This document shows positions 4,446 through 53,395 of a stretch of 64,000 bases of DNA, piece by piece. How positions within the stretch are numbered: position 1 is the stretch's first letter; each line of letters starts with the position of its first letter. This DNA is from Octopus sinensis. Its lineage: Eukaryota. Made by a program: the position numbers and the translations under genes. The notes under the pieces are model-generated. The model was given only the letters and a program-made list of their open reading frames with translations, was not told where the DNA came from and made no database searches. Location: NCBI RefSeq assembly GCF_006345805.1, contig NC_043004.1, positions 32,922,001-32,986,000 on the forward strand, read 5' to 3'.

Positions 4446-4700
4446 TGGCCTATATAACATGCTTTAATGTAATAAAATCGTTTTCCTCCTCAATACGCGC
4501 TGCTGAAATTGGTGTGCATCTAATCCACCCGTATGTGATACGCTGTGCATAGAATCGAGTATGTTCTTTTCAAAGTGGGTCCTACATCCAAGAATAGTTT
4601 CCCTCGGTGAACTTAGGCACGTAGAATAAACTGTTGGAAATGTCTTGCTTCCAATGAAGGGAATCTATTTGAAATTTCAACAATTCATCACTGGTGATAA

Positions 4701-4933
4701 GGCGGCGAGCTGGCAGAATCGTTAGCACGCCGGACGAGATGTTTAAAGGTATTTCGTCTGTCGCTACGTTCTGAGTTCAAATTCCGCCGAGGTCGACTTT
4801 GCCTTTCATCCTTTCTGGGTCGATAAATTAAGTACCAGTTACGCACTGAGGTCGATATAATCGACTTAATCCGTTTGTCTGTCCTTGTTTGTCCCCTCTA
4901 TGTTTAGCCTCTTGTGGGCAATAAAGAAATAAG
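4701..4933 (+). mobile_element. SINE family A, full length
   Basis: Near-identical to 431-664. Degenerate TSD TTCATCACTGGTGATAA / TTCATCAATGATGATAA. Confidence 0.9.
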
Positions 4934-5119
4934 ATTTCATCAATGATGATAATTCAGATGGGAAATCAATCGGTAATCGTTCAAATCGAGAAATCAAGCG
5001 AACAAGACGTAAACCAGCGTTGCTGTGTGGTTAAGAAGCTTGTTTCAATCCCATCGTGCGACACTTTTAGCAAGTGACTTTTACTATTGCATCGGCCCGG
5101 CAAACCAAAGTCCATTATA

Positions 5120-8974: not shown

Positions 8975-9480
8975 GGAGGGGGCTAAGTCGACTATTCAAC
9001 AGATATTTATCGAACCCAAAAGGATGAAATGCAAAGTCGACCTCGTCGGAATTTGGACTCAGAACGTAAAAACGGATGAAATACCTATTTCTTTACTACC
9101 CACAAGGGGCTAAACAGAGGGAACAAACAAGGACAGACAGACGGATTAAGTCGATTATATCGATCCCAGTGCGTAACTGGTACTTATTTAATCGACTCCG
9201 AAAGGATGAAAGGCAAAGTCGACCTCGGCAGAATTTGAACTCAGAACGTAAAAACGGATGAAATACCTATTTCTTTACTACTCACAAGGGGCTAAACACA
9301 GAGAGGACAAACAAGGACAGACAAACAGATTAAGTCGATTATATCGATCCCAGTGCGTAACTGGTACTTATTTAATCGACCCCGAAAGGATGAAAGGCAA
9401 AGTCGACCTCGGCGAAATTTGAACTCAGAACATAACAGCAGACGAAATACCGCTAAGCATTTTGCCTGGCGTGCTAACAA
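8975..9480 (-). mobile_element. SINE family A tandem trimer (about 182-bp period)
   Basis: Three head-to-tail body units; the junction AAAGAAATAGGTATTTC (minus strand) recurs at about 9081 and 9263. Confidence 0.9.
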
Positions 9481-9494
9481 ATCTTATAATAATA

Positions 9495-9558
<64 letters not shown>

Positions 9559-9589: not shown

Positions 9590-9755
9590 CAAACTAGCAG
9601 AGTACAGGAGCTAGCCATTGCGTTACAGAGGCTATGGAAAGTGTAGTTATAGGAGCTATTCCTAAAGATTTGAACAGTTGGATGGAGGAAATAGGTTTAA
9701 AACCCAGTTTAGTACAGCTCCAGAAAACCATGTTATTAGGGACAGCTAGGACTAT
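9590..9755 (+). mobile_element. R4/Dong-type LINE 3' fragment
   Basis: KYRSxxIA...VIGAIPKDLNSWMEEIGLKPSLVQLQKTMLLGTAR resembles the C-terminus of a restriction-like endonuclease (RLE); preceded by (AAT)n(AAC)n. Confidence 0.7.
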
Positions 9756-9789
9756 TGTCATTATTATTTCTTTTTATCACAACTTTTGT

Positions 9790-10357
9790 TGGAACTCCTG
9801 GAGTTTTGCATGCGTAGCGGTCTTGCTGCCGGCGGCCTACAGTACCATGCTATCTGTTCTTTTCAACTATTTAATACTTTCTTGATAATTCTGGCTGTGT
9901 CAACAGTTCTACTGGGCATTACATTCCGATTTCCTTTATATTCCTCTTGATGCCTTCTGATACTGTCTCTAAGGATCAAACAATAATTGGCACTACCTTC
10001 ACCTTCTTCATTTTCCATAGACGGGCTATTTCCTACCTAAGACGGTTGTATTTGTCTATTTCTTTGCTTTCCTCTTTGACTATTCGTGGGTCAAAGGGGC
10101 ATACAACATCAACTAAATTGTACATGTGGTGCATCTTGTCGACCACCACTAGGTCCGGTCTGTTATGCTCTAGGACTTGATCTATTTGGGTTGGGAATTC
10201 CAAGAGGATTTTGCTAATCTCCGGCTCCACCTCTCTGTGTGTTTTTTTCTCATGTCACGTCTTGCCTCTCTCTAGCCCCCCTTTTTCTGCACAGTTTCCA
10301 GTGTAACACTTTCGCTGCCTTATCGTGTGGCTACAATTTGTAGTGGTTTTGGGTAAG
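9790..10357 (-). mobile_element. R4/Dong-type LINE 3' fragment (RLE domain), decayed
   Basis: HDKAAKVLHWKLC...EHNRPDLVVVDK...VDVVCPFDPRIVKEESKEIDKYNRLR shows the RHD / PD..D / KxxxY RLE motifs; its 5' truncation abuts (TAA)n. Confidence 0.85.
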
Positions 10358-16760: not shown

Positions 16761-16899
16761 ACAATTTTCTTCATTTTAAATGTTTGTCCTTCTTTTGCGG
16801 ATTTTTCTTTTGTCTGTGAATTCCATATTAAGAATAAAAATAAATAAATATTAGCGATGGAAGTAGTATTAATATCCAAAAGAAATCTTTATATACAGG

Positions 16900-17282
16900 A
16901 TCGGCTGTGTGGTAAGTAGGTTGCTTACCAACCACATGGTTCCGAGTTCAGTCCCACTGCGTGGCACCTTAGGAAAGTGTCTTCTACTATAACTTCGGGC
17001 CGACCAAAGCCTTGTGAGTGGATTTGGTAGACGGAAACTGAAAGAAGCCTGTAGTATATATGTATATGTGTGTGTGTGTTTGTGTGTCTGTGTTTGTCCC
17101 CCCTAGCATCGCTTGACAACCGATGCTGGTGTGTTTACGTCCCCGTAACTTAGCGGTTCGGCAGAAGAGACCGATAAAATAAGTACTAGGCTTACAAAGA
17201 ATAAGTCCTGGGGTCGATTTGCTCGACTAAAGGCGGTGCTCCAGCACGGCCACAATCACATGACTAAAACAAATAAAAGAGA
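16900..17282 (+). mobile_element. SINE family B (CORE-like, OR-type), full length
   Basis: GGCTGTGTGGTAAG head, GGTTCAGTCCC B-box-like, CORE-like GGCACCTTRGGCAAGTGTC, internal (TA/TG)n, tail GTGCTCCAGCAYGGCC...AAAAGAG. Confidence 0.9.
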
Positions 17283-19160: not shown

Positions 19161-19212
<52 letters not shown>

Positions 19213-19235
19213 GTTATTGTTGTTGTTGTTGTTGA

Positions 19236-19560
19236 GGCGGTGAGCTTGGCAGAAACGTTAGCACGCCGGGCGAAATGCTTAGAGGTATTTCGTCTGCCGC
19301 TACGTTCTGAGTTCAAATTCCGCCGAGGTCGACTTTGCCTTTCATCCTTTCGGGGTCGATTAAATAAGGACCAGTTACGCACTAGAGTCGATATAATCGA
19401 CTTAAGCCATTTGTCTGTCCTTGTTTGTTCTCTCTGTGTTTAGCCCCTTGTGGGTAGTAAAGAAATAGGTATTTCGCCCGTCGCAACGTTCTGAGTTCAA
19501 ATTCCGTCGAGGTCGACTATGCCTTTCAACCTTTCGTAGTCGACCAGTAAAACATTGGGG
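19236..19560 (+). mobile_element. SINE family A dimer
   Basis: Full unit followed by a second body joined at AAAGAAATAGGTATTTC (about 19460-19477). Confidence 0.85.
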
Positions 19561-20462: not shown

Positions 20463-20852
20463 GGAGTGGCTGCGTGGTAAGCAGCTTGCTTACCAACCAC
20501 ATGGTTCCGGGTTCAGTCCCAATGCGTGGCACCTTGGGCAATTGTCTTCTACTATAGCCTCGGGCCGACCAAATCATTGCGAGTGGATTTGGTAGATGGA
20601 AACCGAAAGAAGCCCGTCGTATATATGTATATATATATGTATATATGTATGTGTCTGTATTTGTTCCCCCAACATCGCTTGACAACCGATGGTGTGTCTA
20701 CGTCCCAGTAACATAGCGGTCCGGCAAAACAGACCGATAGAATAAGTACTAGGCTTACAAAGAATAAGTCCTGGCGTCGATTTGCTCGACTAAAGGCAGT
20801 GCTCCAGTATGGCCGCAGTAAAATGACTGGAACAGGTAAAAGAGTAAAAGAG
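20463..20852 (+). mobile_element. SINE family B, full length
   Basis: High identity to 16900-17282; tandem GTAAAAGA tail. Confidence 0.9.
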
Positions 20853-21902
20853 TTAATTGGTCCAACCAACTGAGTAACAATAAAGAAGTGATATTGGACC
20901 AGTGAGTGTGGTTATTATTATTGGTGGAATGACCCTTCCAAGACACACTAAGATTTGTTTCAGCACACGAATTCACATCCAGAATATTGCAAACCAAACA
21001 CAAAAACTCCATAAAAATATATTTTAAAAACATATGACGTCAATGAAAAAGAATGTGAAATATCTCTTGTTTGTTCAGCACGAATCGACTTCCAGTAATT
21101 CATTAGCGATCTTTAACCTCCTTAAAGTAGTGTCCATGAGGTTAACTTTACTTCTATCTACAATTAACTGCACTTTAAATCGATGTCTTGCAAACAACTT
21201 GCACATGCAAGTGCTACCAGTCAAAAACTCCGCATACCGGAAGCCAGAAAGTGTATGGGGTCATCAGGAGAGAATGCGCGCCGTTTCGGGGCCTACATCT
21301 CAACGGCATCAATGCGCACCGCCCCCCCCCCTCACTGATATGAAGCCCCGCTTGCTAGATCAGCTGGTTATCAAATAAAGCTCAATATTCTTCTAGCCAT
21401 CGCTCATCGTCTCTTTTTAACCAAATCCAGTGGCTAGCCTTCTCCACTGTAGATTGGATATCGGTCATGGTGGTATTGACTTTATGATGAGTTAGGCCTA
21501 ACGATAACAACAGTCATCTCACACTGGGTACAACGAACCCTCTACATAATGCAAGCAATTTCGGCGGAGAGGTTAGATTGATTCCATCGACCCCAGTACG
21601 CAACTGGTACTTAATTTATCGACCTCGAGAGGATGAAAAGCAAAGTCGACCTCGGCCGAATTTGAACTGAGAATGTCGTGACGGACGAAATGCCACTAAG
21701 CTCGGTGTGCTAACAATTCTGCCACCTTATTTCGTATAAATATTGATCTCGTTTTACTAGAAACAAACCCCGTGGCTCTTTCGACTTACATTTTGTTTTA
21801 AACTCAAACCAGAAGATGGCCATCGTCACATCTCACCAGTTTCGTTGTTTCATACTTGTCAATTATTCCTGTTCCGCTATGATATATCAATCATTGTTTA
21901 AA

Positions 21903-22133
21903 AGGCGGCGAGCTGGCAGAAACGTTAGCACGCCGGGCGAAATGCGTAGCCGTATTTCGTCTGCCGTTACGTTCTGGGTTCAAATTCCGCCGAGGTCGAC
22001 TTTGCCTTTCATCCTTTCGGATTCGATAAATTAAGTACCCGTTACTCACAGGGGTTGATGGAATCGACTTATTCTGTTTGTCTGTCCTTGTTTGTCCTCT
22101 CTGTGTTTAGCCCCTTGTGGGTAGTAAAGAAAT
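21903..22133 (+). mobile_element. SINE family A, full length with 21-bp TSD
   Basis: TSD ATATATCAATCATTGTTTAAA at 21882-21902 and 22134-22154. Confidence 0.9.
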
Positions 22134-23114
22134 ATATATCAATCATTGTTTAAATATATATGTTAATTACTTTCATATGTTAATTAGTTCCATATATTAA
22201 TTAATTTCAAGTCTAATTTTTACAGTTAAGACACATTGAAGAGTAAATCGAATCAATGAACGACTCGTTCAATATACTCATTAAGTTCGAAACTAATTGC
22301 TATAAGGCAATTAAGCTTGGCACTGTTCCAAACCAAACATCTCATTCAAAAAGGAACCAGCAAAGAGGAGAGTCGACGTGGTCGCTCGCTGTGCTAGAAA
22401 TAGCTGCCATATTTCACTTAAATCACATCCGACAGTCTTGATGTAGTCCTTGTTTGATGATGATATGAAAGTATGTAGCCTAATGGTTAAGTTATTGAGC
22501 TGGCAACCATGACGTTGAAGGTTCGATTCGTGGATCTTTGACCAAGTCACATCATTTCAACTGCTCAGTGGAAAGAACAAGCCAAGTACTGGTGCAACCC
22601 TTTCTCATTCCATATTGTTGCATCATTTATTCTAGTAGGTCATGGGTGGCAAGCCCGAGACAGTGTCTATGTCTGCTAGAGACAAAGCAATTAACGAAAG
22701 CACATACTGCCAAGACATCCATGATTCCAAGTGATACAGCCGTAGTCAGACAGATGACAGCCGAAATATAAAAACGGGATGGTCACGGATGGAATACCAT
22801 TGATTATAGATCTGTTCAATCAGGGCTGACCAGAAGTTAAACGCCAGCAATAACGTTCGGTGTAAACTACATATTTATCAAACCGTTTCAAAATCGTAGT
22901 CCGATCAGTTTCGGAAGTTTTATTGCAAAATAAAGTGGTTTGATTTTTTCACAGAAACTTTTTAAAAATGTGTTTATAGGCAAAAAGAAATAAAAAAAAT
23001 AACGAGTTGGTTGAGTGATATTTATTGCAACGGAAACACAGTAATGGAATAAAGTAATTAAATTAATTCGCTAATAAAACAATTAGATTAATTACGTAAT
23101 ATAAATCTACTTAC

Positions 23115-23555: not shown

Positions 23556-24042
23556 TTTCGCGTTTACTTGTTTCAGTCATTGGACTGCGGCCATGCTGGG
23601 GCACCGCCTTGAAAGATTTAGTCGAAAAACTCAATCCCAGGATTTCTTTTTTAGACTCTGCTACTTAAAGTATCTGTCCCTTTTTCTCTACGTTACAAGG
23701 ACATCAACAAATCAACACCGGTTGGAAAATGATGGATTGGGTCAAACACAAAATATAACACAACACACACACGCGTGCACACACACACAACGGGCTTCCA
23801 CACAGTTTCCATCTAACAAATGCACTCACAAGGCTTTCGTTGGCTCAGGGCTATAGTAAAAAGCACTATCCCAAGGTGCCACACAGTGCGATTGAACCAG
23901 AAACTATATCGTTGTCAATCAAACTTCTCAGCCACACAGCCGTGCTTGCTCCTATATTAATCCCAAGGGTCACTTAAATGGCAGTTAGTTTCCCCTGTTT
24001 TCATATCTTAAATTTAGGGACACCGTATTTTAATAGAATGTA

Positions 24043-24190: not shown

Positions 24191-24213
24191 TAAATTCCAC
24201 AGAAAATCTATAG

Positions 24214-24583
24214 AGTGGCTGTGTGGTAAGTAGCTTATATACCAACCACATAGTCCCAGGTTCAGTCCCACTGCGTGGCACCTTGGGCAAGTGTCTTCTA
24301 CTATAGCCTCGGGCCAACCAAAGCCTTGTGAGTGGATTTGGTAGACGGAAACTGAAAGAAGCCCGTCGTATATATGTATATATATGCGTGTGTGTGTGTG
24401 TGTTTGTCCCCCTAGCATTGCTTGACAACCGATGCTGGTGTGTTTATGTCCCCGTAACTTAGCGGTTCGCCAAAAGAGACCGATAGAATAAGTACTGGGC
24501 TTACAAAGAATAAGTCCCGGGGTCGAGTTGCTCGATTAAAGGCGGTGCTCCAGCATGGCCGCAGTCAAATGACTGAAACAAGT

Positions 24584-24590
<7 letters not shown>
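24214..24590 (+). mobile_element. SINE family B, full length
   Basis: Same architecture as 16900-17282; ends in (GA)n. Confidence 0.9.
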
Positions 24591-25271: not shown

Positions 25272-26445
25272 TAGGCTGATAACATCATAAGATTTGAAAG
25301 GCAGCTCCTTGAGCAACACTTTGCCTGATAACCTAGAATACATGCCAAAGAAGCCACACGACTCTACCGCAACATATCATCAGATGAAAGGACGAGCCCG
25401 TATTAGCAGAAAACTATGCATGGATATGTTAGCAGAAAGCTCCGTGATGATAGTAACATCTATCATCAAAACAGTTTATCATGAACCTATAGCCGGATTA
25501 CTACCTCCCTCGTTGAAGGGTATGCGTTTGCAATTCAGGAACAGGAAATATCAACCAAGTACTTGATGCACAAAAGGGATAGAGATGCAGGAAAAGCAAC
25601 CGATGCAGACTTTGTGGAGTTCACACTGAAGATATCCCCCACATCAAAAGCATCACGGTATTATCTACCGATGAGACATGACGTTGTAGCTAGGATACTC
25701 TATAACGAAATCCGCCGGATTGAAAATCCCGAGGACAAAGAAATAAGAACCCACAATATGGTAGAAGCCATAGCCGCTCACAATAAAAAGGAATACTGGG
25801 GGAATGTACCAGTGAAGGCCTCAATAAAATGTAAGCTCAAAAGACCTGATATAATGATTTGGGATAGACAAGAGAAACTGTGCACAGTTGTGGAAATTAG
25901 CTTCCCAACGGATGTTAACATAAAGCTGAAGATCAGTGAAAAAGAGAACACCTATGCCGAACTATTGAGAAATCTGCAGTTTCTCTATCCAGATTACAAG
26001 TTTAGGTTTATACCTGTAATTACTGGCGCTCTGGGACATGAAACACACTGCCTACATATCAATCTTGAGAACTTAGGCTTCTCAAAACCAGAAAGGGGAA
26101 AGTTAATTCGAAGACTATAGATCCAATCCATCACTGGAACTGTAAATATCTGTAAAAATTCCAGAAGTTTATCATTTAAATACATATGATCATGTCTAGA
26201 TATGCAACTATATGCAAGAGAATACATACATCAAACATACAAATCTGCACATACATACATACATACATACATACATACATACATACATACATACATACAT
26301 ACATACGTACGTACGTACATACATACATACATACATACAAAAATACCTTGTTGATGTTGAAATTCCAATGAAGGAGCCTTGGATCTAGGTGAGAAACCGA
26401 TTCTTTCTCTATTGGCAAGAAATCATGAAATAAACTGAATGACAT
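25272..26445 (+). mobile_element. R4/Dong-type LINE 3' portion (zinc-finger/RLE region), decayed, embedded in (TACA)n
   Basis: ORF 25563-26120 has RYYLPMRHDVVARILY...RPDIMIWD...VVEIS...EKENTYAELLRNLQFLYP...IPVITGALG (RHD, PD..E, KxxxY motifs). Flanked by (TACA)n on both sides. Confidence 0.9.
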
Positions 26446-27384
26446 ACATACATACATACATACATACATACATACATACATACATACATACATACATACA
26501 TACATACATACATACACGCATACACACATACATGTTTTCATTCTTCAAAGTAATTCAAATGTACAATTGTTTCTAAAGTCTATCGTAGAGTAATTATGCA
26601 GCGGACGAGTCTCAATTTGTTTTAACTATTGAAGCAGTTATATATATCACAAGAAAAGCATCAACATCACAACATCACACTGATTTCTTCTATTTCCTTA
26701 ATTTAATGAGGCTAATTATTTGATAAATATTTCAGAGAACGGAAATTCAGGTAATTATTACTTTCACGTATGATAAATAAAATACCAATTGATTTTTTTT
26801 TATTCTACTGAAAATAATTTGATGTCATTTTTAAGAAAAGTGTTCTTGTCACTTTAAGACTGTGTTTTGAAAATCTTCTTTGTCTTCTTGGCTTTGTTTA
26901 ACATAGGTTATCATCTCTTTGCTAAAGTAGAGGAAGCTGAGTTTATCTTCGTCTGATCTCTGGCTTGGTGAATCACCCATTCTCTAAGACACATTCTTTT
27001 CTCTGTTTAAGAACGTATATGAATAAAAAAACCTCCCTGTAATACATACATACATACATACATACATACATCAAAACATGGGATTAGAAAATGTTTTTGG
27101 TATTTATTCACCATTACCAGTGTTTCATTTCCTAACAAGTGTTACAAAATTTTACATGTAATAGTAAGCATATAGCATATTGTTAAATTTAGGGACGGTC
27201 ATTTTTTTTGGCCAAATAAACACACGCTCTTTGCATTCGTTCTTCACTTCAACATTATTATTGTTCTTATTTTTGCAAGAATAATAATAAAGCTGCAGTG
27301 AAGAACGAATATATATAAGTATAGTGCATGTATTTATTTGGAAAAAAAAACAAAAACAAAACAATCCCAAAATATAAAAATATC

Positions 27385-27522
27385 TACATTATTTACATTA
27401 TTTACATTTGACGGATATTTGTCCTCATCTTGTTTGTTGTTAACACAACGTTTCGGCTGATATACTCTTCAGCCTTCATCAGGTGTCTTGGGGAAATTTC
27501 GAACCTGGGCTCTCATGCCTAA
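27385..27522 (-). mobile_element. Penelope-like pLTR fragment
   Basis: Carries a minimal hammerhead motif and a TGTAAATAA tandem tail; truncated at the inverted-repeat arm. Family assignment is by inference from the ribozyme architecture. Confidence 0.55.
27442..27488 (-). ncRNA. Minimal type I hammerhead ribozyme motif
   Basis: Minus strand: AGACAC-CUGAUGA-A-GGCUG(AAGAGUAUAU)CAGCC-GAAAC-GUU^GUGUU. Intact core, 5-bp stem II, 5-bp stem I, palindromic AACGUU in place of stem III. Confidence 0.6.
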
Positions 27523-27523
27523 G

Positions 27524-27573
27524 AATTGTGGCAGGACATGATCACCTATGTCCTACAGTTTGGACACGGCACC

Positions 27574-27618
<45 letters not shown>

Positions 27619-29898
27619 TAACCTGAACAGTAGAGATGGATTATAGGCAGAGGATGAGAAATGTGTCATGAAAAGGAATAGCTTTGTGGGGAATACAAGG
27701 CTTATAAAATATGAGTGGAATCCAGGTCGAAACGGAAACTGTGGGGTTTAGCTCCGGTTTGAGGGCTTTTGAGGAAGTGTAAAGACTGATAAGGAAACGG
27801 TAGTTCTAGGAATCTCCTGCCTGGTCTGAATGCTTGCAACAGACTGAACTCTACTAATGACTATAGGCTGGCGGGGAGGGGTTAAATCGAGAGGTGTGAT
27901 GTGCTAGAAATTAAGAAGGGGCTGATGTATAGAAAAGAGCGCCTTTGATAACAGATTAAGCTCGATAAGGATTGACCTGGGGTTAAACAACAACAAATTA
28001 AACACTTACTTATTATCTGGTAACGTTGTGTCTTACTGGCAGCTGTGAAAGTGAAACGAATAGATCTACAGATATTCCATAAGACATCAGGTGACAAGAA
28101 TACTTAATTCCTTCTGTATCTATCAACCTACCATTTGGAGCAGTATCTTAAAACTGAATAAAACTGTAAAGATACGAAATGTTTGGAGGCTTCTTTTTTT
28201 TCTTTTTTAGTAGATAGGTCATTTTTAGAACAAAAATATTTCTAATATATACCGAAAATTGTATGAAAATTTAACACAACCATATATCATTGGGAGATCT
28301 ATAATTGGAATATTTTAACCCGATGAAATATTAAAGATTTCAATAACCAAATTTTTATTTCTCGTGGGATCTCGTTTGTCAAAATTATATTAGTTATTAT
28401 CGAACTATGAAAGAAATTGTTGATATTATTGGAAATAAGATTTGGCAATCCAACAGACACACAGTTTATGATGGTAGCATGAGTGATATTTCTTGAGATG
28501 TTATAGCAATTGTTTTATTATCAACATGACACAACTGCAAAAGTAAATGGTGGTGGAAATCGGCCGAAACAGGATATCTCTGGTAAAGAGAACCTGTTAT
28601 CAAAACCGTTCCATATGTGACCATATAGTCAGATTCTGTATCAATGCGTCCTTCCAGATTTGCATATTTAAGATGCAAATTTCATCTCTTACCTAAGTTA
28701 ACAACAACTAAGTTGAAAACTTGATGGTATGGTGTGTAATTGTCGTCATTAAAGATATCGTTATACTAAAGAAACTCTAAAGAAATGGTAGAAAGATCTT
28801 GACGCCAATCGATGAATTGCTTTCGAATCTGCTGTTCGTTTCGCATATGAGAAAACCATTTATACACATTATTCTATTTCCCCATCTGCAGAGTTCTGTG
28901 TTTCTGCAAACGTTTAAATCTTATTTAGATTAGAACGATGCACCTCCAGGACAAGGTAGAGAAAGAACGGGAAACAGAAATACCATTTTACACATACATC
29001 TCAAGAAATATCACTCATGCTACCATCATAAACTGTGTGTCTGTTGGATTGCCAAATCTTATTTCCAATAATATCAACAATTTCTTTCATAGTTCGATAA
29101 TAACTAATATAATTATGACAAACGAGATCCCACGAGAAATAAAAATTTGGTTATTGAAATCTTTAATATTTCATCGGGTTAAAATATTCCAATTATAGAT
29201 CTCCCAATGATATATGGTTGTTGTAAATTTTCATACAATTTTCGGTATATTTTAGAAATATTTTTGTTCTAAAAATGACATATCTACTAAAAAAGAAAAA
29301 AAAAAGAAGCCTCCACACATTTCGTATCTTTACAGTTTTATTCAGTTTTAAGATACTGCTCCAAATGGTAGGTTGCTAGATGCAAAAGGGATTAAGTACT
29401 CTTGTCACCTGATGTCTTATGGAATATCTGTAGATCTATTCGTTTCACTTTCACAGCTGCCAGTAAGACACAACGTTACCAGATAATAAGTAAGTGTTTA
29501 ATTTGTTGTTGTTTAACCCCAGGTCAATCCTTATCGAGCTTAATCTGTTATCAAAGGCGCTCTTTTCTATACATCAGCCCCTTCTTAATTTCTAGCACAT
29601 CACACCTCTCGATTTAACCCTTCCCCACCGGTCTATAGTCATTAGTAGAGTTCAGTCTGTTGCAAGCATTCAGACCAGGCAGGAGATTCCTAGAACTACC
29701 GTTTCCTTATCACTCTTTACACTTCCTCAAAAGCCCTCAAACCGGAGCTAAACCCCACAGTTTCCGTTTCGGCCTAGATTCCCCTCATATTTTATAAGTA
29801 TGCTATTCCCCACAAAGCTATTCCTTTTCATGACACACATTTCTCATCCTCTGCCTATAATCCATCTCTACTGTTCAGGTTGTCTCTCTGTCTCTCTG

Positions 29899-29943
<45 letters not shown>

Positions 29944-29995
29944 TTGGTTCCATGCCCAAACTGTAGGATATAGGCGATCATATCCTGCCACAATT
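27524..29995. repeat. Large inverted repeat: arms 27524-28501 and 28996-29995, spacer 28502-28995
   Basis: Arms are reverse complements (identical 71-aa ORFs at 27882-28097 minus and 29402-29617 plus); roughly 95% identity by eye. Confidence 0.95.
28693..28765 (-). CDS. Candidate 73-nt coding exon (YNDIFNDDNYTPYHQVFNLVVVNL), unrecognised protein
   Basis: Minus strand: TCTTTCTACCATTTCTTTAGAGTTTCTTTAG|TATAAC...AACTTAG|GTAAGA. Only one frame is open (phase 0 in, phase 1 out). A competing AG lies 11 nt upstream. Confidence 0.4.
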
Positions 29996-30600
29996 TTTTG
30001 TTCTTTGTTTTCTGCGACTCTCCCACTTTCTGATGTTTAATGTCTTTCTCTTCCAACCAGTTAGCCAAGCTTGACATCCATATCATCCTTTCCAACCCTT
30101 TGCTTCTTTTTCTCTTCAATCTTCTCGGCCGTCGCTAAATCCTTCAGACACTCTTTTCTCATCACGTGACCGAAAATCTCAGTTGTTTGGCCCTTATCTC
30201 ACAAAGCAGTTTTCTATTTACCGCAGACCAGGTCATCATTAGTCACTTGGTGTGTCCATGCTATCCTCAATATTCTTCTTAAGAACCACATTTCCCAGCT
30301 CTCCAAGCATCTTCTTATTTCCGATGTAAAACCATGCCTGACTTCCATACATTAACACATGGTAGACGTAGCATTTCAAAATACGGATCTTAGTCTTGAT
30401 GCTCAGAGTACGGAGATCGATTCTCAAGATGTTATACAATTTTAAGAATGTAGATTTTGCCAGCACCATTCTTCTTTTGGTCTTTTTCGCAGATCTTGCA
30501 TCTTCTGTGATCGACGTTCCAAGGTAGTTGAAAAATGATACCTGCTTAATGATTTGATTGTTCACTTTCAGCATGCACCGTTTAAGATACACTCTTTATT
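29940..30600 (-). mobile_element. RTE-clade LINE 3' fragment
   Basis: IKQVSFFNYLGTSITED...RILKCYVYHVLMYGSQAW and ...KRSKGLERMIWMSSLANWL...LWQDMIAYILQFGHGT, followed by a (GA)n tail. Confidence 0.9.
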
Positions 30601-31064: not shown

Positions 31065-31900
31065 TGTTATATAAACATGAATACGGACGTAGTAGATAAC
31101 AGCTAGCCTTCGGCCGCTTGGACCCTGTTGTGTCCGCTACTCTGATTGGTTGGTATTGGCGCAGTTTGTCTCTTGCTCTGTTTCGCGCCGATGTGCAACC
31201 CAAGCAATAGTAGCCTTTTGATAAGGTCATGTGAGACAGTCTCTTCTAAATCTCCGTTTGCGCCTACTGGTCCCTATAAAAAGCTAGCTTCAACACCGTA
31301 TTTCGTCTTTCGGTTCTAGACCTTCTAAGGTCTAACCACTGACCACAGAGCACACAACCAGTTCCAGCAACAGACGACACCAGCAGTTCACATGGAGAAA
31401 CATCAACACTTCGTCCAGCAGTATCAGGACCTACATCTCCGTCGCCAACATCTCTCTACGTACACCCAGGTTTTATCTCCTCACTGTTTGTGAATTACTT
31501 TACCATGGTTAACAGCAATACAACCTGCGAGAAATTCCTGTATCAAGTGACCGGCAGCGGCATAGTAGCCACAACTTCTTACACGACATGTGCTTCAACC
31601 GGCTCTTCTTCTTCGCCACAACTTCTTGTTACAGCACTTCAACTATTGTGTACCTTACTACGAACTGGTATTTATCATCATTGTGTGTGAACATTCTTCT
31701 AGCTCTGTATTTTATCTCACACGCATACACCCTTGTTTGTACACACATTCACATTATGTATGCATGACCGCCTGTCTATTGTTATTATTACATATGTACT
31801 TATGACGAACACACGGAAACACATGTTAACACCTAAATAAAATCTTCTCTTAAACCTTCTGTCGGTTATGTCTTTCTTCTCCTTCTGGCACCCATACTCA
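31065..31900 (+). mobile_element. LTR-like unit (possible solo LTR)
   Basis: Begins TG, reverse CCAAT (ATTGG 31145-31149), TATAAAAA (31275-31282), AATAAA (31836-31841); GC-richer than its flanks. No TSD or matching terminal CA could be fixed. Confidence 0.4.
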
Positions 31901-33604: not shown

Positions 33605-34698
33605 TTAAAACGACAAATCTGTCGGACTTTCAAAGAGGTCAAACTGTTGGTACTCGTATAGCAGGCGCTAGCGTAACGAAAGCAGTTGAAATGTTTGGTG
33701 TGTCAAGAAGTACTGCCTCGAGAGTAATGACAGCCTTTGGAGAAAGAGAAAAAAACCTCCTCGTCGAAACAAAACTCTGGAAGAAAACCAAAACTTTCCG
33801 ATAGGGACCGCCGAACTCTTACGCGAATTGTTAGAAAGGATCACAAAAGTACAGCTCTCAAAATTACTGCAAAGCTTAATGACCACCTCGAGAACCAAGT
33901 TTCCATAAAAGCTGTTCGCCGGGAGCACAAAGTCAGATTTCACGGGAGGGCTGCAATTAAAAAACAACTACTTTCAAAATCAAACATTGCAAAGCGTTTA
34001 GAGTGGAATAAAAACCTACAGAATTGGTCACTAGAGCAGTGGAAGAATGTCATTTTCTCGGACGAGTCATCCTTTATTTTATTTCCGACCACCAGCCGTG
34101 TATACGTGTGGAGACAGCCAAAAGAAGCATTTGACCCAGAATGCCTACTTCCAACTGTTAAACATGGAGGAGGATCTGTGATAATCTGGTGGGTGGTGGG
34201 GGTCTATATCTTGGAAATCCGCTGGCCCAAAGGTTTCCCTTTAAGACAGATATTAATAGTCAAGACTATTTAAGCATTATATCTGATCAAATTCATCCTA
34301 TGATTGCAGAACTGTTTCCGATGGGAAACGCAATCTTTCAGGATTATGATGCACCAATTCCCACAGGTAAAGTTGTTACTGAATGGCGCGAGGAACATTC
34401 TAGTGAAGTTGAGCAACTTATCTGGACACCACAGCCCCCAGATCTCAATATGATTGAACATTTATGGTGCATTTCAGAAAAATAGGTAAGGAGTCGATAT
34501 CATCCACCATCATCACTACAAGAACTGGAGACTGTTTTAGCTGAAGAATGGACAAAAATTCCTTTGGAAACAATTCAAACTTTGTACGTGTCCATACCTC
34601 GTGGAATTGAAGCTGTAATTACTGCCAAAGGTGGTCCCCATATTAAAATAAATTTGCTTGAAATTTTAAGGTGTTTCCATTATATTGTCCAACTCCTG
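33605..34698 (+). mobile_element. Tc1-like DNA transposon (DD37E/TRT-type), frameshifted, 5' TIR missing
   Basis: LSDFQRGQ...GRKPKLSDRDRR...VIFSDESSF...TVKHGGGSV...IFQD-(37 aa)-E (PPDLNMIEHLW). 3' TIR GTGTTTCCATTATATTGTCCAACTCCTG then TA. Confidence 0.9.
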
Positions 34699-35181: not shown

Positions 35182-35445
35182 AAGCAATTAGTTACCTGTG
35201 CAAGAATAAAACAAGCATACTCAAAAATCATTGAGACTGAAGAATATAATTAATATATACAAACATGGAACACTCACCATTTTCGCAATTGCCAGGCAAA
35301 CACGTGTATGAAGGTATTCGATTTCTCATCAACGATTACGATTAACCTGTAATGGTTTCACTTAACAGCTGAAGTGGGAAGTGTGTTGATTACCGATCAG
35401 AAATCTGGTTTGATAGACCTGGCATGCCGGAAAACCCCGAGTACT

Positions 35446-35679
35446 TATTTCTTTTACTGCCCACAAGGGGCTACACGCAGAGGGGAAAAACAAGGACAGA
35501 CAAAGGGATTAAGTCGATTATATCGACCCCAGTGCGTAACTGATACTTATTTAATCGACCCCGAAAGGATGAAAGGCAAAGACGACCTCGGCGGAATTTG
35601 AACTCAGAACGTAAAGACAGACGAAATACTGCTAAACATTTCGCCCGGCGTGCTAACATTTCTGCCAGCTCGCTGCCTT
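35446..35679 (-). mobile_element. SINE family A, full length with 17-bp TSD
   Basis: TSD GGAAAACCCCGAGTACT (35429-35445) / GGAAAACTCCGAGTACT (35680-35696). Confidence 0.9.
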
Positions 35680-36821
35680 GGAAAACTCCGAGTACTGTAA
35701 GTGAGTGTTATATGCATATGTGTGCGTGTGTGGGGGGAGGGTGCAGTGTTCCTTATCGCAAGCATTGCGTACACTTTTTCTTGTAAGAGAGAATAGATAA
35801 GATGGGGAGAGATAGAGATAGGTGCCAGTTGCGCAAGAGATGTTAAGTTCATGGCAGTTTGAGACTCGCATTACAGTTCAGTTTCCGTTTACTACCAGAT
35901 CCTCGCATTACAGTTTCCGATTGTAAGCAGCATGGAGATTGTTGACCCTCTCTTCGTTGTCTTCTTTTGGACGGGCAACCTCCATGTAAAGCTTCTAGCG
36001 ACAATCCAAGAACGCATGAAAGTTAATTCCAAGATGTTTTATTCATAAAGACAAAGAAACTCTACTAATGTATTATTTTTCAATCCATCCCAGAGCTGGC
36101 TCTTGCCAATCAATATATTCGCTGATCTTAGGTTCAAACTCAAACTCAGTTTCTTATCAAGAATGTTATTACGATATCAGATGTCGACGAAGAATGTGTG
36201 TTACAGGTGGACAAAGGTAATGGCGGCGTTGAGGTTGAAACTAAAATTAAATGTCTTGTTTAGTTCAACGATTCAATCATATCAAAGTTTCCCTGGGGAA
36301 GAGCTCTTCGTTTATCAGACATTGAGATTTATGGAAGGAAAAAAAAAAAGAACGGAAAAAAACAAAGAATTCAATAAAACTCGCATAGAGGAAGAAAGAA
36401 GAAAACAGGAAGAATAAGAGTGAAATTAAAAAGACAATTATTTTAGTCTATGCAAATTGTATAAAGAACAAACCTGGACAAACAAACGGCCGCCATATTT
36501 GAGTTATTTACCTAGAAGAGATAATAACGACGTTTTGTATGTTGGAAAGCGAGTTTTTGTTGTAGTTCAGTGAAGCAATTAACGATTGCCACAATCTCGA
36601 CCTAATGAAATACTAATTTAGATAACAATGGTAAGAAAGAAGAGACACAAAAGCTTAGCAATTCACCAGGAAAAGAATGAAGAATTCGAAAAGTTTACCC
36701 AACGAACAACAAACACCTTAACTGGAAACATTTCCTAAGAAAGCAGACTGGAAAGCAAAAATCAATTTAGCAGTAAAGGATTTTTCTCTTCTTTCGTGAC
36801 AGCCTATATATATATATGTAT

Positions 36822-48919: not shown

Positions 48920-49290
48920 TGAAGTTGTCTGTGTATGGCAGGTTTGGTAGCCTTCAACTAACACTATCTCCTCCGAGACCCTGGGGCGCAAGTTGACCAA
49001 AATTGAGAGTATAATAGAAGGCTTGCTCTTCCTTTCGTAGAAGAAAAAAAAATCAAATCGGACCATGTTAACACACAAAATTATTTACATCAAAAAGGTG
49101 CTTTTTCTCTATGAAAATCCCTATTTTCTACGATTTTTGACTGCTGTGTTGCCATTTTTCGGTGTATTTCAACCAGAAAAATGTTCACTTAAAGAGAATA
49201 ACCAGCTACATAATGCAAATTTTTACTTTTCAAAAATTCCAATTTTAAAGAGTCGAAACAAACCCGAAAAACGCCGAGCGATACTGCTAG
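48910..49290 (+). mobile_element. Non-autonomous Helitron (second family)
   Basis: 3' end CCCG..AACGCCG..CGATACTGCTAG|T mirrors the 7461-7889 terminus; 5' end is buried in (TA)n. Confidence 0.65.
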
Positions 49291-49309
49291 TATATATATA
49301 TATACACAA

Positions 49310-49830
49310 GTTTACGAGTGGTTTCCACGCTTTAGGAAAGGTCACTTGTCAATTGAGGACCAACCTCGTTCAGGACGACCGTCGACCTCCCGGACGATTG
49401 AAAGCATCATGAAAATTCATGAACTGATCTTGGAGAACCGTCACTGAAAAATTGACAAACTTGATATGACAGGTATGTCCTGGAGCTCCTGCCACAAATT
49501 TTGATCGAGGAATTACGAATGAAAGGAGTTGCAGCAAAATTTGTGCCTAGCTTGCTCGCGGAGGATCAAAAGCAGTGGCGACTGAATGCGTGCCATGAAA
49601 TGAAAGAACAGTTGGAAGTTGATCCGCATCTTTTTTGAAGGTCATCAGTGGTGACAAAAGCTTGTGCTGTGGAATTTGCAGATGTGGAAGAGATGAAGAA
49701 AAAACGACGGGGGCGTTAAAAGGCATCACTTTGCAAGAGTTCCATCACTGTTTCGAATAGTGGAAAACGTGCCTGGACCGATTCATTGCTTCAAATGAAG
49801 AATACGCTGAAGGCGGTAAAAGAGTAAACA
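49310..49830 (+). pseudogene. Internally deleted mariner transposase relic
   Basis: SIEDQPRSGRPSTS...ELRMKGVAAKFVPSLL.EDQKQWR...ISGDK, then jumps to FADVEEMKKK...WKTCLDRFIASNEEYAEG; the catalytic middle is missing. Confidence 0.85.
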
Positions 49831-50802
49831 TGTAAAACTAAGTGAGTAAAATAATACTGCAAAATTCCGGTTTCTTTTGGGTATTAGTATTAGTAAACGG
49901 AAGATAAATTTCATTCGATACAAGTTTCATTTGGATCTCAGTCTTTTTTTACTAAGAAGTGAAAACATCTCGAATTTACTTCCTGTTCTTGATTTATCGC
50001 CAAACCCAACAGGTAACAGAGCTCTTGAAAATTTTGGAGAAATGGCAGCCTGGTCTCATTGACAATACAGAGACAGAAAGAGAGAGAAAGACAGAGAGAG
50101 AGGGAGGGGGTAGAGACGGAGAGAAATAAGAAGAGAGAGAGAGAGAGAGAGAGTTATCTACCTTAAGGAAACACACCTTTAATACTACACGTTGGCCAAA
50201 GTCCAATGAATTTAGCTGCCTTTCTTCCCCTCACCACCCTCTTACCACCCCAACACCTTTTCCATTCTTTCCCGTCCTTTCACCGTAGAACTGCAACTTT
50301 CTGGAAAGAACCATCCACGTTTTCTTAGAGAAATTCAAGTTAAGCATGAACGCTAAGGGCACTGCTTCCTCCTTCGATAATTGTATTAAAAAGATTAACG
50401 GCACACAGCTTCCCTGGTAATCCTTCTTCTTTCTTGAAAAGGTCTTGAAAGGGTTGTTGATTGGGAAATACACTAAAAAGTGAATCTCACTTGGCTAAAC
50501 CAGATTATGTGTTGGCATAAAGTTATAGGCACAACAATGCAATGTTCGGAAAGTGACCAGTCTAATTTAGCTTACATGAAATAGAAAGAAAGAAAGAAAG
50601 AAAGAAGGAAATAAAGAAGAAAAGAAAGAAAGGAAAACGTTAATCAGGGGTTGATGGAAGTGTTGTATGTTTCTATTACATGAAAAAGGAAATTGGTCAG
50701 AACAGGAGGTGCCTTATAAGAATTACTCCAGTAACCATAAAATGAGATGGTTGCAAAGAGTAGAAAAAGGTATTTCGTCTAAAACCAGGCGTACTAATCA
50801 CC

Positions 50803-51037
50803 TATTTCTTTACTACTCACAAGGGGCTAAACACAGAGGGAACAAACAAGGACAGACAAACGGAATAAATCGAATACATCGACCCCAGTGCGTAACTGGC
50901 ACTTAATTTATCGGCCCCCGAAAGGATGAAAGGCAAAGTCGACCTCGGCGGAATTTGAACTCAGAACGTAACGGCAGACGAAATACGGCTACGCATTTCG
51001 CCCGGCGTGCTAACGTTTCTGCCAGCTCGCCGCCTTA
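50803..51037 (-). mobile_element. SINE family A, full length with 16-bp TSD
   Basis: TSD AGGCGTACTAATCACC at 50787-50802 and 51038-51053. Confidence 0.92.
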
Positions 51038-53079
51038 AGGCGTACTAATCACCGGGCGGTTGGTGTTCCTCTTCAAGTCAGGGGTTTCTCTATGACGGAG
51101 CTGTGATCCCATTATTCCACATATTTGCAATCTCTAATCTTGGTCATTAGCCTCGTTCAAAAGAGAGGGGAAGGCTCAATGAAACCAACTTACTCATGGT
51201 AATCAGTATAAAGATTTAAAAAAAAAAAAAACCTTCGATTATGAAGACCCGGAGGTTATAAATCCATTGTATCAGCTTTTAAAATCTTCAGTTTTTAAAT
51301 TCTTCAGCGAATTCTTTGAAACCTCAATGTTATGATTTCCAAATAAATATTTCAGCTTTAAATCACAGTACCTAATCATTTAGTACGACATTTTTATTTA
51401 TTAAGCCCGAATTGCGTGTATTTCTCCCACCAAAACGGAACATTTTAGAGAAAGCAAACAAAATGCAAGATATATTCTTGGCTTGTTTAAATAAAATATA
51501 CGAAATGAGATTTTATTCTGATTTCTGATGTGAAAGCATATCGTGAAACTAAGCCATAAATCCAAACACCAAAGTCGTTTCACTCTGGAATCGAGTAAAG
51601 TTTATACAGTTGCAAATAACAACAACATCAACGGTTACAGATATTTTAGAATTAATCATGTTATGTTACAGTTCAATGCAATCGATTCTCGTTGCTTCCA
51701 ACTTGGTAATTGTTCTTTAGAGAGATAACCATAAATCTTCTTCTTGAAAGGAAGACAATTCGAAATTTACAGGACACTAATAAAGAACATTGGAGGCTTT
51801 TGTAGGGATAAGAGAACGTGTATATTTTCTATATTGCTCAATATAAATGGGTTATGCTATGATTTCTGGTATTTCATAGCCTACCAAAATCGTAACTTAT
51901 ATTTCTCGTTAGAAATTAAGAAATAGAACCAATTCACATTATATTTCGCTTGAATAATTTCCTCCTAAAACAATTGAATTAATATCCGGTTTAAGTTCCA
52001 TTTTACCAAAAGTAGATATAGAAATAATGTAAATCTTTTTGGCGCAACACCCACAGAATGAGAACAGGTTCGTTACTCATAAAGAATCCGAGCTTTTATT
52101 TCACTCAACCATTCTTTAAATAATTCTTTAGAGGTGAACATAAATTGAGTGTAAGATATGTAGGAATGTCGAAGTGAATGAGAGTAATCAGAATTCCTTA
52201 CCCAGAATACATTGGTTATTTAGATGACTTCGTCAATTTGGCTGAGGCTGGGATCCTGTTGGCAACGGCGATGAGGATTCACTTGATCCAGTCAATGGAA
52301 CAGCCAGCTTATGAAATTAACGCGCAAGTGGCTGAGTACTTCATAGATACGCATACCCTTAACGTAATTGTTAGTGAAATTCAGCGTGACACAGAATGCG
52401 ACAAGGCTGGCCTCTTTGAAACACGGGTAGAACTCATTTTTGCCAGTTGAAGGGATTGGAGCAACGTGAAATAAAGTGTCTTTGTCGAGGACACAATACG
52501 CCGCCAGGTATCGATCTGATGACCTTAAGATTGAGAGCCGAATAGCTTAACCACCTAGCCACGCGACTTCACCAATCATAACAACTTTAGGTTTACGTAA
52601 ATTCTGCCTGACTAAACCTAGTATTTTATCTTACTCTTTTACTTGTTTCAGTCATTTACTGTGGCCATGCTGGAGCACCGCCTTTAGTCGAGCAAATCGA
52701 CCCCAGGATTTATTCTTGTAAGCCTATTACTTATTCTATCGGTCTCATTTTCTCTCATCTTACCCACAATTTATTAACAGAATATTCTTCTCCTCTTATA
52801 TTAACTCAACAGTGTCATTATCTTCCAAGAAAAGAATCCTAAACATGTGTTCTACTCAATATACTTTTTACAGTAACACTGTTTATTTCCAAACACGTCA
52901 TAAAATAACATATAATTAAAAAAAACATACATACGCTGTGTGATGTAATCAATAATTAATCTCAGTCCCTTTCTGTCAAAGTAACCTCACTTTCTGTGCA
53001 TTACAGAATAGCAATAAGCTATCTACAGATAAATTATCACGGTCACAGTCTCACAGTATTGACCAAACCATCAGATGCT

Positions 53080-53395
53080 GTTATACACCGCTGGTCACAA
53101 TGCGTTTCCGATTCTATCTTGATTGTGCCATTCTTTTCCATCTTGAACCAAATTGCTTCACCAGATCATCTTCTCATCGTCGTGGAGGCCTTCCAAGTGG
53201 CCTCTTCTGATCTCTTGGACACCACTCGGCAGCTGCCTGGGTCCACATATTGCCTGTGAACCTTGAAACATGGCCAGCCCAGTAGAACTTGTGCTTTCTG
53301 GATTCTGCGATCACATTCGTTCACCCCGCTCCATTTTTGAATTGCCTCATTTCCAATATGCTCTCGTAATTATATATATATATAAGTGGAGGTGC
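53080..53395 (-). mobile_element. RTE-clade LINE 3' fragment
   Basis: RKHKFYWAGHVSRF...EWCPRDQKRPLGRPPRR*EDDL; typical WAGHV / RxxGRP motif. Confidence 0.85.

What the first reader, a model, noticed from the sequence alone, without database searches (positions are those of the whole stretch)
27524..29995. About 1-kb inverted repeat that loops out a single candidate exon
Seen: arms 27524-28501 and 28996-29995 (roughly 95% identical) enclose a 494-bp unique spacer holding a 73-nt open exon candidate (28693-28765) with GTAAGA donor. The right arm continues into an RTE LINE, while the left arm keeps only its last 50 bp or so, so the left arm looks like the derived inverted copy. Established: flanking intronic reverse-complementary sequences promote exon skipping and back-splicing and are ADAR substrates, and coleoids edit RNA extensively. 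Inference: the pre-mRNA would form a kilobase dsRNA that sequesters a frame-shifting (73-nt) exon, a possible structure- or editing-controlled splicing switch, circRNA or endo-siRNA source.
Basis: partly seen in the sequence, partly recalled or inferred. Interest (0 to 1): 0.75.

Follow-up and report, generated by a model that had tools for sequence, protein, structure and literature searches.

The report
Young inverted duplication in octopus junk DNA
A real, roughly 1-kb inverted repeat with a 494-bp spacer lies in transposon-rich, apparently non-coding octopus DNA; it is most likely a recent DNA-copying accident, and the "exon" it was said to loop out is no better than chance.

Summary
The inverted repeat is real. 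Its arms are 27521-28501 and 28996-29998 (949 of 1003 aligned columns identical), the spacer is 494 bp, and it is the longest and tightest inverted pair in the window. The right arm does run into a decayed, 5'-truncated LINE whose ORF ends at a (GA)n tail, and the left arm keeps only 55 bp of that LINE.

The 73-nt "exon" (minus strand) is not supported. Equivalent AG...open...GTAAGA/T segments are as common in simulated sequence (25 +/- 5.5) as in the real window (21). No protein contains its 24 codons, although octopus proteomes are in the database. A weak Calx-beta resemblance of the spacer frame failed three independent checks, and it runs through both an in-frame stop and the proposed donor.

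The arms have two ages. The LINE tails differ by 14.5% and the other ~880 bp by 2.6% (p = 2e-4), and the tail differences leave a 3' stem-loop intact. There are no target-site duplications, no coding domains and no other copies in the window.

My best reading is a non-functional, few-million-year-old inverted segmental duplication, probably seeded at two oppositely oriented (GA)n retroelement tails. If it is transcribed it would form a ~955-bp dsRNA, a routine ADAR substrate in octopus. Whether the locus is transcribed or lies in a gene could not be tested.

The parts
27521..27575 (+). Left-arm retroelement 3' tail: 55 bp homologous to the last codons of the LINE ORF. It is either an extreme 5'-truncated LINE or the LINE-derived tail of a SINE.
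   Evidence: It aligns to 29998-29944 with 8 mismatches in 55 positions (14.5%), against 2.6% in the rest of the arm. It folds into the same stem-loop as the right copy, with one compensatory pair. The motif occurs only twice in the window.
27576..27618 (+). (GA)n microsatellite tail, left arm.
   Evidence: TRF finds period 2 with 21.5 copies. It differs in length from the right-arm tract.
27619..28501 (+). Left arm proper: the young inverted copy of non-coding flanking DNA.
   Evidence: About 97.4% identical to 29882-28996. No Pfam domain in any frame of the equivalent right arm. No other copy in the window.
28502..28995 (.). Unique 494-bp spacer, the loop of the hairpin.
   Evidence: No similarity elsewhere in the window, no Pfam match and no word-sharing homolog.
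28693..28765 (-). It is judged to be a chance open segment.
   Evidence: The pattern occurs at chance frequency and no protein contains it. The same frame continues after a single TGA into a 70-codon ORF. The weak Calx-beta-like resemblance of that frame is not reproduced by independent models.
28996..29882 (-). Right arm proper: the presumed template, contiguous with the LINE tail.
29883..29939 (-). (GA)n tail of the LINE, read as (TC)n on the + strand.
   Evidence: TRF. In octopus RTE elements a microsatellite begins right at the ORF end (PMC9115989).
29940..30650 (-). Decayed, 5'-truncated LINE fragment (reverse-transcriptase C-terminal region). Only its last ~59 bp (29940-29998) lie inside the right arm.
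   Evidence: The translation needs three frames and contains stops. Homologs at E = 2.5e-50 to 1e-26 carry PF00078.

Best explanation
The feature is a non-functional, evolutionarily young inverted segmental duplication of about 0.9 kb of non-coding DNA, in a transposon-rich stretch of an octopod genome.

Shown:
- Two arms of ~1 kb, 494 bp apart.
- They are single-copy in the window, carry no coding domains and have no target-site duplications.
- The inner ~880 bp differ by 2.6%. Using the published octopus calibration, that is roughly 4 million years (inference).
- The outermost 55 bp, a LINE 3' tail, differ by 14.5% yet keep the same stem-loop.

Inferred mechanism:
- Two related retroelement tails, each ending in (GA)n, already lay in opposite orientation about 2.4 kb apart. 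One was a 5'-truncated RTE-type LINE on the minus strand. The other was a 55-bp LINE tail or a LINE-tailed SINE on the plus strand.
- A replication or repair intermediate ending in one (GA)n tract re-primed on the inverted (TC)n/(GA)n tract (template switch, or synthesis-dependent strand annealing).
- It copied ~880 bp of the neighbour's flank and was then re-joined without homology at 28501/28502.

Consequence: the product has no demonstrable role. If a transcript happens to span it, it will fold into a ~955-bp dsRNA and be hyper-edited by ADAR, like very many other octopus inverted repeats. The 73-nt 'exon' in the loop is a chance open segment.
For: - Repeat anatomy and identity.
- Outlier status among inverted pairs in the window.
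- No other copy of arm or spacer in the window, even at low stringency.
- No TSD of 6 bp or more around the left arm, the right arm or the whole unit.
- No simple-repeat or A-rich tail at the inner ends: direct reading.
- No Pfam domain in the arm or the spacer.
- No tRNA or Rfam feature.
- Two-age structure: 8/55 mismatches in the tail against 23/876 elsewhere, Fisher p = 2.4e-4.
- All 15 predicted pairs of the tail stem-loop are intact in both arms despite 8 differences, including one compensatory C-G/U-A pair. A neutral simulation gives P = 0.03-0.09. This is what is expected if the two tails come from different active retroelement lineages rather than diverging in place.
- The LINE fragment is old, with multiple frameshifts and stops, which matches the older tail divergence.
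- (GA)n-tailed retroposons are common in this window.
- Octopus RTE ORFs end directly in a microsatellite: PMC9115989.
- The substitution spectrum between arms is symmetric (A>G 3, G>A 5, T>C 5, C>T 5), so there is no sign of a copied, edited RNA.
- Exon candidate at chance level and without homologs.
Against: - The pre-duplication state is unknown, so the template-switch step is inferred rather than observed.
- Divergence outside the tail also declines from the outer to the inner part (4.4%, then 2.0%, then 1.7%; p = 0.04). A single step-like copying event does not predict that; gene conversion does.
- The stem-loop is not itself energetically significant (z about -1.1), and the covariation rests on a single compensatory pair.
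- Copy number of the arm in the whole genome could not be checked, so a low-copy TE cannot be excluded.
- Lack of function is a default assumption, not a demonstration. Transcription, editing and small RNAs were untestable.
Confidence: 0.55

Rival explanations
1. A single, older inverted duplication copied the LINE tail, the (GA)n tract and the flank in one event. Later arm-to-arm gene conversion homogenised the inner parts and left the outer edge diverged. Alternatively, ectopic conversion from other LINE copies altered one tail.
For: Mismatch density falls monotonically from the outer edge to the loop: 14.5%, 4.4%, 2.0%, 1.7%. Closely spaced inverted repeats are known to undergo gene conversion (general knowledge, for example sex-chromosome palindromes). 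The homology boundary at 27521 lies inside LINE sequence, as a random breakpoint would.
Against: It requires the stem-preserving tail differences to be coincidence, with P about 0.03-0.09. The jump from 14.5% to 2-4% happens exactly across the microsatellite.
Confidence: 0.25
2. The arms are two independent insertions of one ~1-kb mobile element, for example a LINE with a long 3' UTR after an internal (GA)n tract, or a non-autonomous element. They landed tail to tail, 494 bp apart.
For: 5'-truncated LINE copies are the commonest LINE insertions. The published octopus RTE-2_OV has a ~600-nt 3' UTR. The database holds no close copy of this LINE family with which to check its true 3' end.
Against: No further copy of the arm in 64 kb that is otherwise full of repeated families. 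No TSDs. In RTE-2_OV the 3' UTR is mostly microsatellite. The tail is 5 times more diverged than the supposed UTR.
Confidence: 0.07
3. The left arm is a retrotransposed read-through transcript of the right-hand LINE (3' transduction): a 5'-truncated LINE plus transduced flank, inserted nearby in inverted orientation.
For: The architecture (a short LINE end, then its tail, then the parent's downstream flank) is what 3' transduction produces.
Against: No TSD. No new tail at the 3' end near 28501. The LINE part is much more diverged than the transduced part, although the two should be the same age. There is no A-to-G excess.
Confidence: 0.04
4. One reading: the hairpin lies in an intron and sequesters a real 73-nt frame-shifting exon, acting as a structure- or editing-controlled splicing switch, or as a circRNA or endo-siRNA source.
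For: Very strong predicted duplex. Reverse-complementary matches promote both exon skipping and back-splicing (PMC8330042) and are ADAR targets (PMC8938519, PMC5625713). The organism is an octopod.
Against: The exon signal is at chance level. No homolog or annotated protein contains it. No host-gene exon was recognised in the window. The duplication is young and one-off, with no sign of constraint. Competing AGs lie just upstream of the acceptor (output).
Confidence: 0.03
5. Assembly artefact: a chimeric or palindromic long read, or a mis-join, created a false inverted duplication.
For: Inverted duplications are a known failure mode of long-read and amplification-based libraries (general knowledge).
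Against: Such artefacts give near-identical arms with little or no spacer. Here there are 32 substitutions (18 transitions, 14 transversions), different microsatellite lengths, a 494-bp unique spacer and a structured divergence pattern.
Confidence: 0.04

Closest known systems
Inverted segmental duplications and small palindromes made by replicative template switching or fold-back repair (FoSTeS/MMBIR-type events)
   Same: Two arms in inverted orientation around a unique spacer. No TSDs, non-homologous inner junctions, a single locus, non-coding content.
   Different: Here the outer boundary coincides with microsatellite-tailed retroelement ends that are older than the rest of the arms. That suggests priming in pre-existing inverted (GA)n tracts rather than in a few bases of microhomology. 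The mechanism is inferred, not observed.
Intronic reverse-complementary matches (for example inverted Alu pairs) that drive exon circularisation or skipping and serve as ADAR substrates
   Same: Long, near-perfect intramolecular complementarity over a short loop. The predicted duplex is much longer than a typical Alu pair.
   Different: No evidence that the locus is intronic or transcribed. The enclosed 'exon' is not supported. The arms are mostly unique DNA rather than two members of a dispersed repeat family.
Hairpin-RNA (hpRNA) endo-siRNA loci of Drosophila
   Same: A single-locus long inverted repeat with a short loop, evolutionarily young.
   Different: hpRNAs are defined by Dicer-2-dependent ~21-nt small RNAs and by complementarity to a target gene. 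Neither could be tested, and the arms match nothing else in the window.
LINE 3' transduction
   Same: The left arm consists of a very short LINE 3' end plus the sequence that lies downstream of the right-hand LINE.
   Different: No TSD, no terminal tail, and unequal ages of the LINE part and the 'transduced' part.
Octopus RTE-class LINEs (for example RTE-2_OV, PMC9115989)
   Same: The reverse-transcriptase C-terminal ORF ends directly in a microsatellite, and there is a short 3' stem-loop before the tail.
   Different: The fragment here is 5'-truncated to ~700 bp and decayed. Its clade was not established phylogenetically, and the closest database relatives are only ~46% identical.

Membership tests
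Intronic RCM pair flanking a skipped or circularised exon | Extended reverse complementarity between two segments on one strand | tested here: met
   949 of 1003 aligned columns identical. RNAfold pairs ~955 arm-arm positions, with MFE about -1800 against -571 kcal/mol for the control.
Intronic RCM pair flanking a skipped or circularised exon | A bona fide exon between the arms | tested here: not met
   The candidate pattern is at chance frequency: 21 observed against 25 +/- 5.5 simulated. No protein shares its residues. The Calx-beta lead was not reproduced by Pfam, PDB or the animal-only model.
Intronic RCM pair flanking a skipped or circularised exon | Both arms lie in introns of one transcribed gene | not testable with these tools
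   No transcript data or genome annotation was reachable. Exact look-ups of window ORFs found no record. No host exon was recognised.
LINE 3' transduction product | Target-site duplication flanking the insertion | tested here: not met
   No shared k-mer of 6 nt or more in the 35-nt flanks.
LINE 3' transduction product | New 3' tail (poly-A or microsatellite) at the end of the transduced segment | tested here: not met
   The left arm ends ...GAGATGT|TATAGC with no repeat tail.
LINE 3' transduction product | LINE part and transduced part of equal age | tested here: not met
   14.5% against 2.6% mismatches, p = 2.4e-4.
Transposable element with terminal inverted repeats or foldback element | TSDs and multiple dispersed copies | tested here: not met
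   No TSD around 27521-29998. No other copy in the window. Genome-wide copy number was not testable.
hpRNA / endo-siRNA locus | Long hairpin-forming inverted repeat at a single locus | tested here: met
hpRNA / endo-siRNA locus | About 21-nt small RNAs from the arms and a complementary target gene | not testable with these tools
   No small-RNA data were available. The arms match nothing else in the 64-kb window.
RTE-clade LINE | Reverse-transcriptase ORF whose end abuts a microsatellite 3' tail | tested here: met
   RT C-terminal homologs carry PF00078. The ORF ends at 29944 and (GA)n begins at 29939. The same feature is described for octopus RTE.
RTE-clade LINE | Phylogenetic placement in RTE; N-terminal AP-endonuclease domain | not tested
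   The copy is truncated to its last ~700 bp, and no reference RTE set was at hand.
Calx-beta domain coding sequence (spacer, minus strand) | Significant match to independent Calx-beta models | tested here: not met
   PF03160 was not reported. The PDB phmmer search found no Calx-beta hit. The animal-only HMM ranks the spacer 5th of 103 six-frame segments, at 0.6 bits. Only 5 multi-repeat bacterial proteins hit, with single stretches of ~27-30 bits.

The most novel reading that the evidence does not exclude
The hairpin lies inside a long neuronal pre-mRNA or lncRNA and is used. The kilobase duplex would be hyper-edited, and the loop segment, possibly a decayed Calx-beta-like pseudo-exon, would be included, skipped or circularised depending on how far ADAR has unwound the stem.

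A second, more modest novel reading also remains open. Priming between oppositely oriented microsatellite-tailed RTE/SINE ends could be a recurrent way in which octopus genomes manufacture long hairpin-forming duplications, feeding their exceptional dsRNA and editing load.
Probability: 0.04. Interest if true: 0.55.

Novelty: new member of a known kind. Interest (0 to 1): 0.15.

Why it matters
As it stands it matters little. It is one more structural by-product of repeat-rich DNA, and octopus transcriptomes already carry over a million hyper-edited sites in dsRNA formed by neighbouring inverted repeats (PMC5625713).

Its modest value is twofold. First, it is a clean, datable example of an inverted duplication whose outer boundary sits in older, oppositely oriented microsatellite-tailed retroelement ends. 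That suggests a testable route by which such genomes generate unusually long hairpins. Second, if RNA-seq shows that it is transcribed, it would be a very long, near-perfect ADAR substrate, convenient as a positive control for hyper-editing pipelines.

Tried and rejected
1. The arm as a dispersed repeat: standard and low-stringency self-BLAST found only the partner arm and GA microsatellites.
2. TSDs or microhomology at all three possible insertion boundaries: none.
3. A SINE head in the left flank: no tRNA and nothing significant in Rfam. There is only a B-box-like TTCGAACCTGGG, read by eye at about 27499-27510, so this stays unresolved.
4. The LINE tail next to other (GA)n tracts: absent. 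Other tracts carry a different retroposon tail.
5. Finding close copies of the LINE to define its true 3' end: the best relatives are only ~46% identical.
6. Exact look-ups of three window ORFs in public assemblies, to locate the source record and its annotation: nothing on record.
7. Coding potential of spacer and arm: no Pfam hits and no word-indexed homolog.
8. The exhaustive HMMER search returned five Calx-beta repeat proteins. I rejected these as evidence for four reasons. The score is the sum of weak matches to near-identical tandem repeats. A model built from those hits is circular. Pfam, PDB and an independently derived animal Calx-beta model do not single out the spacer. No other Calx-like exon exists in the window.
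9. Bulk Pfam annotation of all 405 non-repetitive ORFs was prepared but abandoned, because it was unlikely to reveal short host exons.
10. The bacterial promoter/terminator scan is irrelevant to a eukaryote. Its only use was to flag the tail stem-loop.

Full report
**Observation.**
- A gapped alignment pairs 27521-28501 with the reverse complement of 28996-29998 over 1003 columns. There are 949 identities, 32 substitutions and 22 gap columns, and 18 of the gap columns lie in or beside a (GA)n tract.
- The 494-bp spacer (28502-28995) and the arms have no other copy in the 64-kb window, even at low stringency. Only the GA microsatellite recurs.
- Among the 12 inverted pairs in the window with arms of at least 100 nt and gaps of at most 5 kb, this one is the clear outlier: 1003 nt at 94.5%, against at most 390 nt at 68-89%.

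**Organism and setting.**
- The window is AT-rich and crowded with microsatellites and transposon remnants.
- An intact TE-type ORF next to the repeat (25566-26117) has its closest named relatives in Octopus bimaculoides (77% identity) and O. vulgaris (83%). The DNA is therefore octopod, and annotated octopus proteomes are represented in the protein database.
- No tRNA or Rfam family is present.
- I recognised no host-gene exon anywhere in the window. Whether the locus is intronic or transcribed cannot be settled with these tools, and exact look-ups of window ORFs found no source record.

**The LINE.**
- On the minus strand from about 30650 down to 29944 lies the C-terminal region of a LINE reverse transcriptase. 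It is readable only by switching among three frames and passing stops, so it is old and decayed.
- Its relatives (E = 2.5e-50 to 1e-26) carry PF00078 but are at most ~46% identical.
- The ORF ends directly at a (GA)n tract (29883-29939). [quoted passage not shown] The LINE should therefore end at the microsatellite, and the ~880 bp that make up most of each arm are flanking, non-LINE DNA.
- That DNA has no Pfam domain in any frame.

**The 'exon'.**
- The 73-nt open segment is on the minus strand (28765 to 28693). It has AG upstream and GTAAGA downstream, but two competing AGs sit 9-11 nt before the acceptor.
- Counting all AG / pyrimidine-tract / open-frame / GTAAG[AT] segments of 50-300 nt gives 21 donors with such candidates in the real window and 25.1 +/- 5.5 in second-order Markov simulations. 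The pattern therefore carries no information.
- A word-indexed search of 5.8 billion protein clusters found nothing, not even the exact 24 residues.
- An exhaustive HMMER search of the frame that contains it (99 codons, one in-frame TGA) did return five proteins, all bacterial adhesin-like proteins with 7-20 Calx-beta repeats. I do not accept this as homology, for these reasons:
  - The best E-value (6e-16) is a sum over eight near-identical repeats. Single stretches score only ~27-30 bits, far below significance in a library of 2.4e11 residues.
  - Only five members of a very large family hit.
  - Pfam's own PF03160 did not report the sequence.
  - The PDB sequence library, which contains NCX and integrin beta-4 Calx-beta domains, returned only unrelated chance hits.
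  - A model built solely from animal Calx-beta domains retrieved independently of the query ranks the spacer 5th of 103 six-frame segments, at 0.6 bits.
  - The model in which the spacer stood out (8.3 bits against -0.1 for the next best) was built from the very proteins selected by the query, so it is circular.
- Even if the resemblance were real, it runs colinearly through the TGA and through the proposed GTAAGA donor. It would then describe a dead coding relic, not a 73-nt exon.

**Two ages within the arms.**
- Mismatch density is 14.5% (8/55) in the LINE tail, 4.4% in the next 275 bp and about 1.8% in the inner 600 bp. Tail against the rest gives Fisher p = 2.4e-4. Only 4 of the 32 mismatches involve CpG.
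- Both tails fold into the same stem-loop. Of the eight tail differences, one is in the loop, one turns G-U into A-U, two form a compensatory C-G/U-A pair and four lie 3' of the hairpin. All 15 predicted pairs are intact in both arms.
- Under neutral in-place divergence that outcome has a probability of 0.03-0.09, depending on transition bias.
- Taken together with the decay of the LINE, this suggests that the two tail-plus-(GA)n units are independent, older insertions of related retroelements, and that only the ~880-bp flank was copied recently.
- Using the published octopus calibration (Jukes-Cantor distance 0.065 for about 18 million years; PMC13282606), a distance of 0.027 between the arms corresponds to roughly 4 million years, and the tails (about 0.16) to roughly 20 million years. 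These figures are rough inferences that ignore gene conversion.

**Mechanism.**
- No target-site duplication flanks the left arm, the right arm or the whole unit.
- The inner ends carry no repeat tail.
- The substitution spectrum is symmetric, with no A-to-G excess.
- Retrotransposition, including 3' transduction, and transposition of a TIR or foldback element are therefore disfavoured.
- The best-fitting model is a DNA-level template switch, or repair synthesis primed in one (GA)n tract on the oppositely oriented (GA)n/(TC)n tract about 2.4 kb away. It copied the neighbour's flank and re-joined at 28501/28502.
- The main rival is a single older inverted duplication, homogenised towards the loop by arm-to-arm gene conversion. 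The graded decline in divergence favours this rival. The two models can be separated only with orthologous loci or genome-wide subfamily assignment of the tails.
- An assembly artefact is unlikely, given the substitutions, the differing microsatellite lengths and the unique spacer.

**Consequences.**
- If a single transcript of either strand spans the region, RNAfold predicts about 955 arm-arm base pairs, with MFE about -1800 kcal/mol against -571 for a control in which one arm is flipped.
- Long, near-perfect duplexes from neighbouring inverted repeats are the main ADAR hyper-editing substrates across Metazoa. O. bimaculoides shows an exceptionally high load, over a million sites (PMC5625713).
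- Reverse-complementary matches also promote back-splicing and exon skipping (PMC8330042) and are modulated by ADARs (PMC8938519).
Applying it here lacks the two specific requirements, a real exon in the loop and evidence of transcription.

**Verdict.** The structural observation is confirmed and the functional interpretation is not supported. The feature is best filed as a young inverted segmental duplication in non-coding, transposon-rich octopus DNA. The one mildly interesting detail is that its outer edge lies in older, oppositely oriented microsatellite-tailed retroelement ends. Interest is low.

Noticed in passing
window 27203-27350: A nested mini-palindrome just left of the big repeat: 34-nt arms with an 8-nt loop, inside 28-nt arms. 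It looks MITE-like or foldback-like and is single-copy in the window.
   Followed up: partly
window 31145-31480 (+): A promoter-like stretch pointing away from the repeat. It has two inverted CCAAT boxes (31145, 31155), TATAAAA at 31275, and an ATG at 31393 followed by 26 open codons and a GT. CpG observed/expected is ~0.9, and there is no other copy in the window. It could be a gene or TE 5' end.
   Followed up: partly
window 25566-26117 (+): An intact 184-aa TE-type ORF with no Pfam domain. It is 77% identical to O. bimaculoides XP_014788340 and 83% to an O. vulgaris hypothetical protein. Decayed relatives are visible by eye at 9598-9882 (+) and 10036-10254 (-).
   Followed up: partly
window 33737-34273 (+): A Tc1-type transposase fragment with the HTH_Tnp_Tc3_2 domain (PF01498, E = 1.5e-8).
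   Followed up: partly
window 436-666, 4687-4941, 9019-9558, 19163-19543, 21890-22134, 35442-35684, 50800-51038: A ~235-nt SINE-like family in at least 7 copies in both orientations, partly tandem at ~9.0-9.6 kb, 87-93% alike. These copies form most of the other potential dsRNA pairs in the window.
   Followed up: no
window 16896-17277, 20463-20840, 24213-24586; inverted copy 23563-23942: A ~390-nt repeat family. The copy at 24.5 kb, and a related tail at ~45.2 kb, end in ...CAGTCAAATGACTGAAACAAGTAAA followed by (GA)n. This shows that other (GA)n-tailed retroposons populate the region.
   Followed up: no
window 28469-28765 (-): The spacer frame (99 codons, one in-frame TGA) has a weak, full-length colinear resemblance to Calx-beta repeats, with five bacterial multi-repeat hits. 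Pfam, PDB and an animal-only model do not reproduce it. It is probably chance, and at most a dead relic.
   Followed up: yes
window 53161-53369 (-), 49214-49635 (+), 63150-63389 (-): Seen by eye in the ORF translations: a second LINE C-terminal fragment, a mariner-like transposase fragment and an LTR-retrotransposon RNase H-like fragment.
   Followed up: no
window 27499-27510: A B-box-like motif, TTCGAACCTGGG, about 10 bp upstream of the left LINE tail (position read by eye from the sequence). It hints that the left tail belongs to a tRNA-derived SINE with an RTE-type 3' end. ARAGORN and Rfam do not recognise a tRNA-like head.
   Followed up: partly
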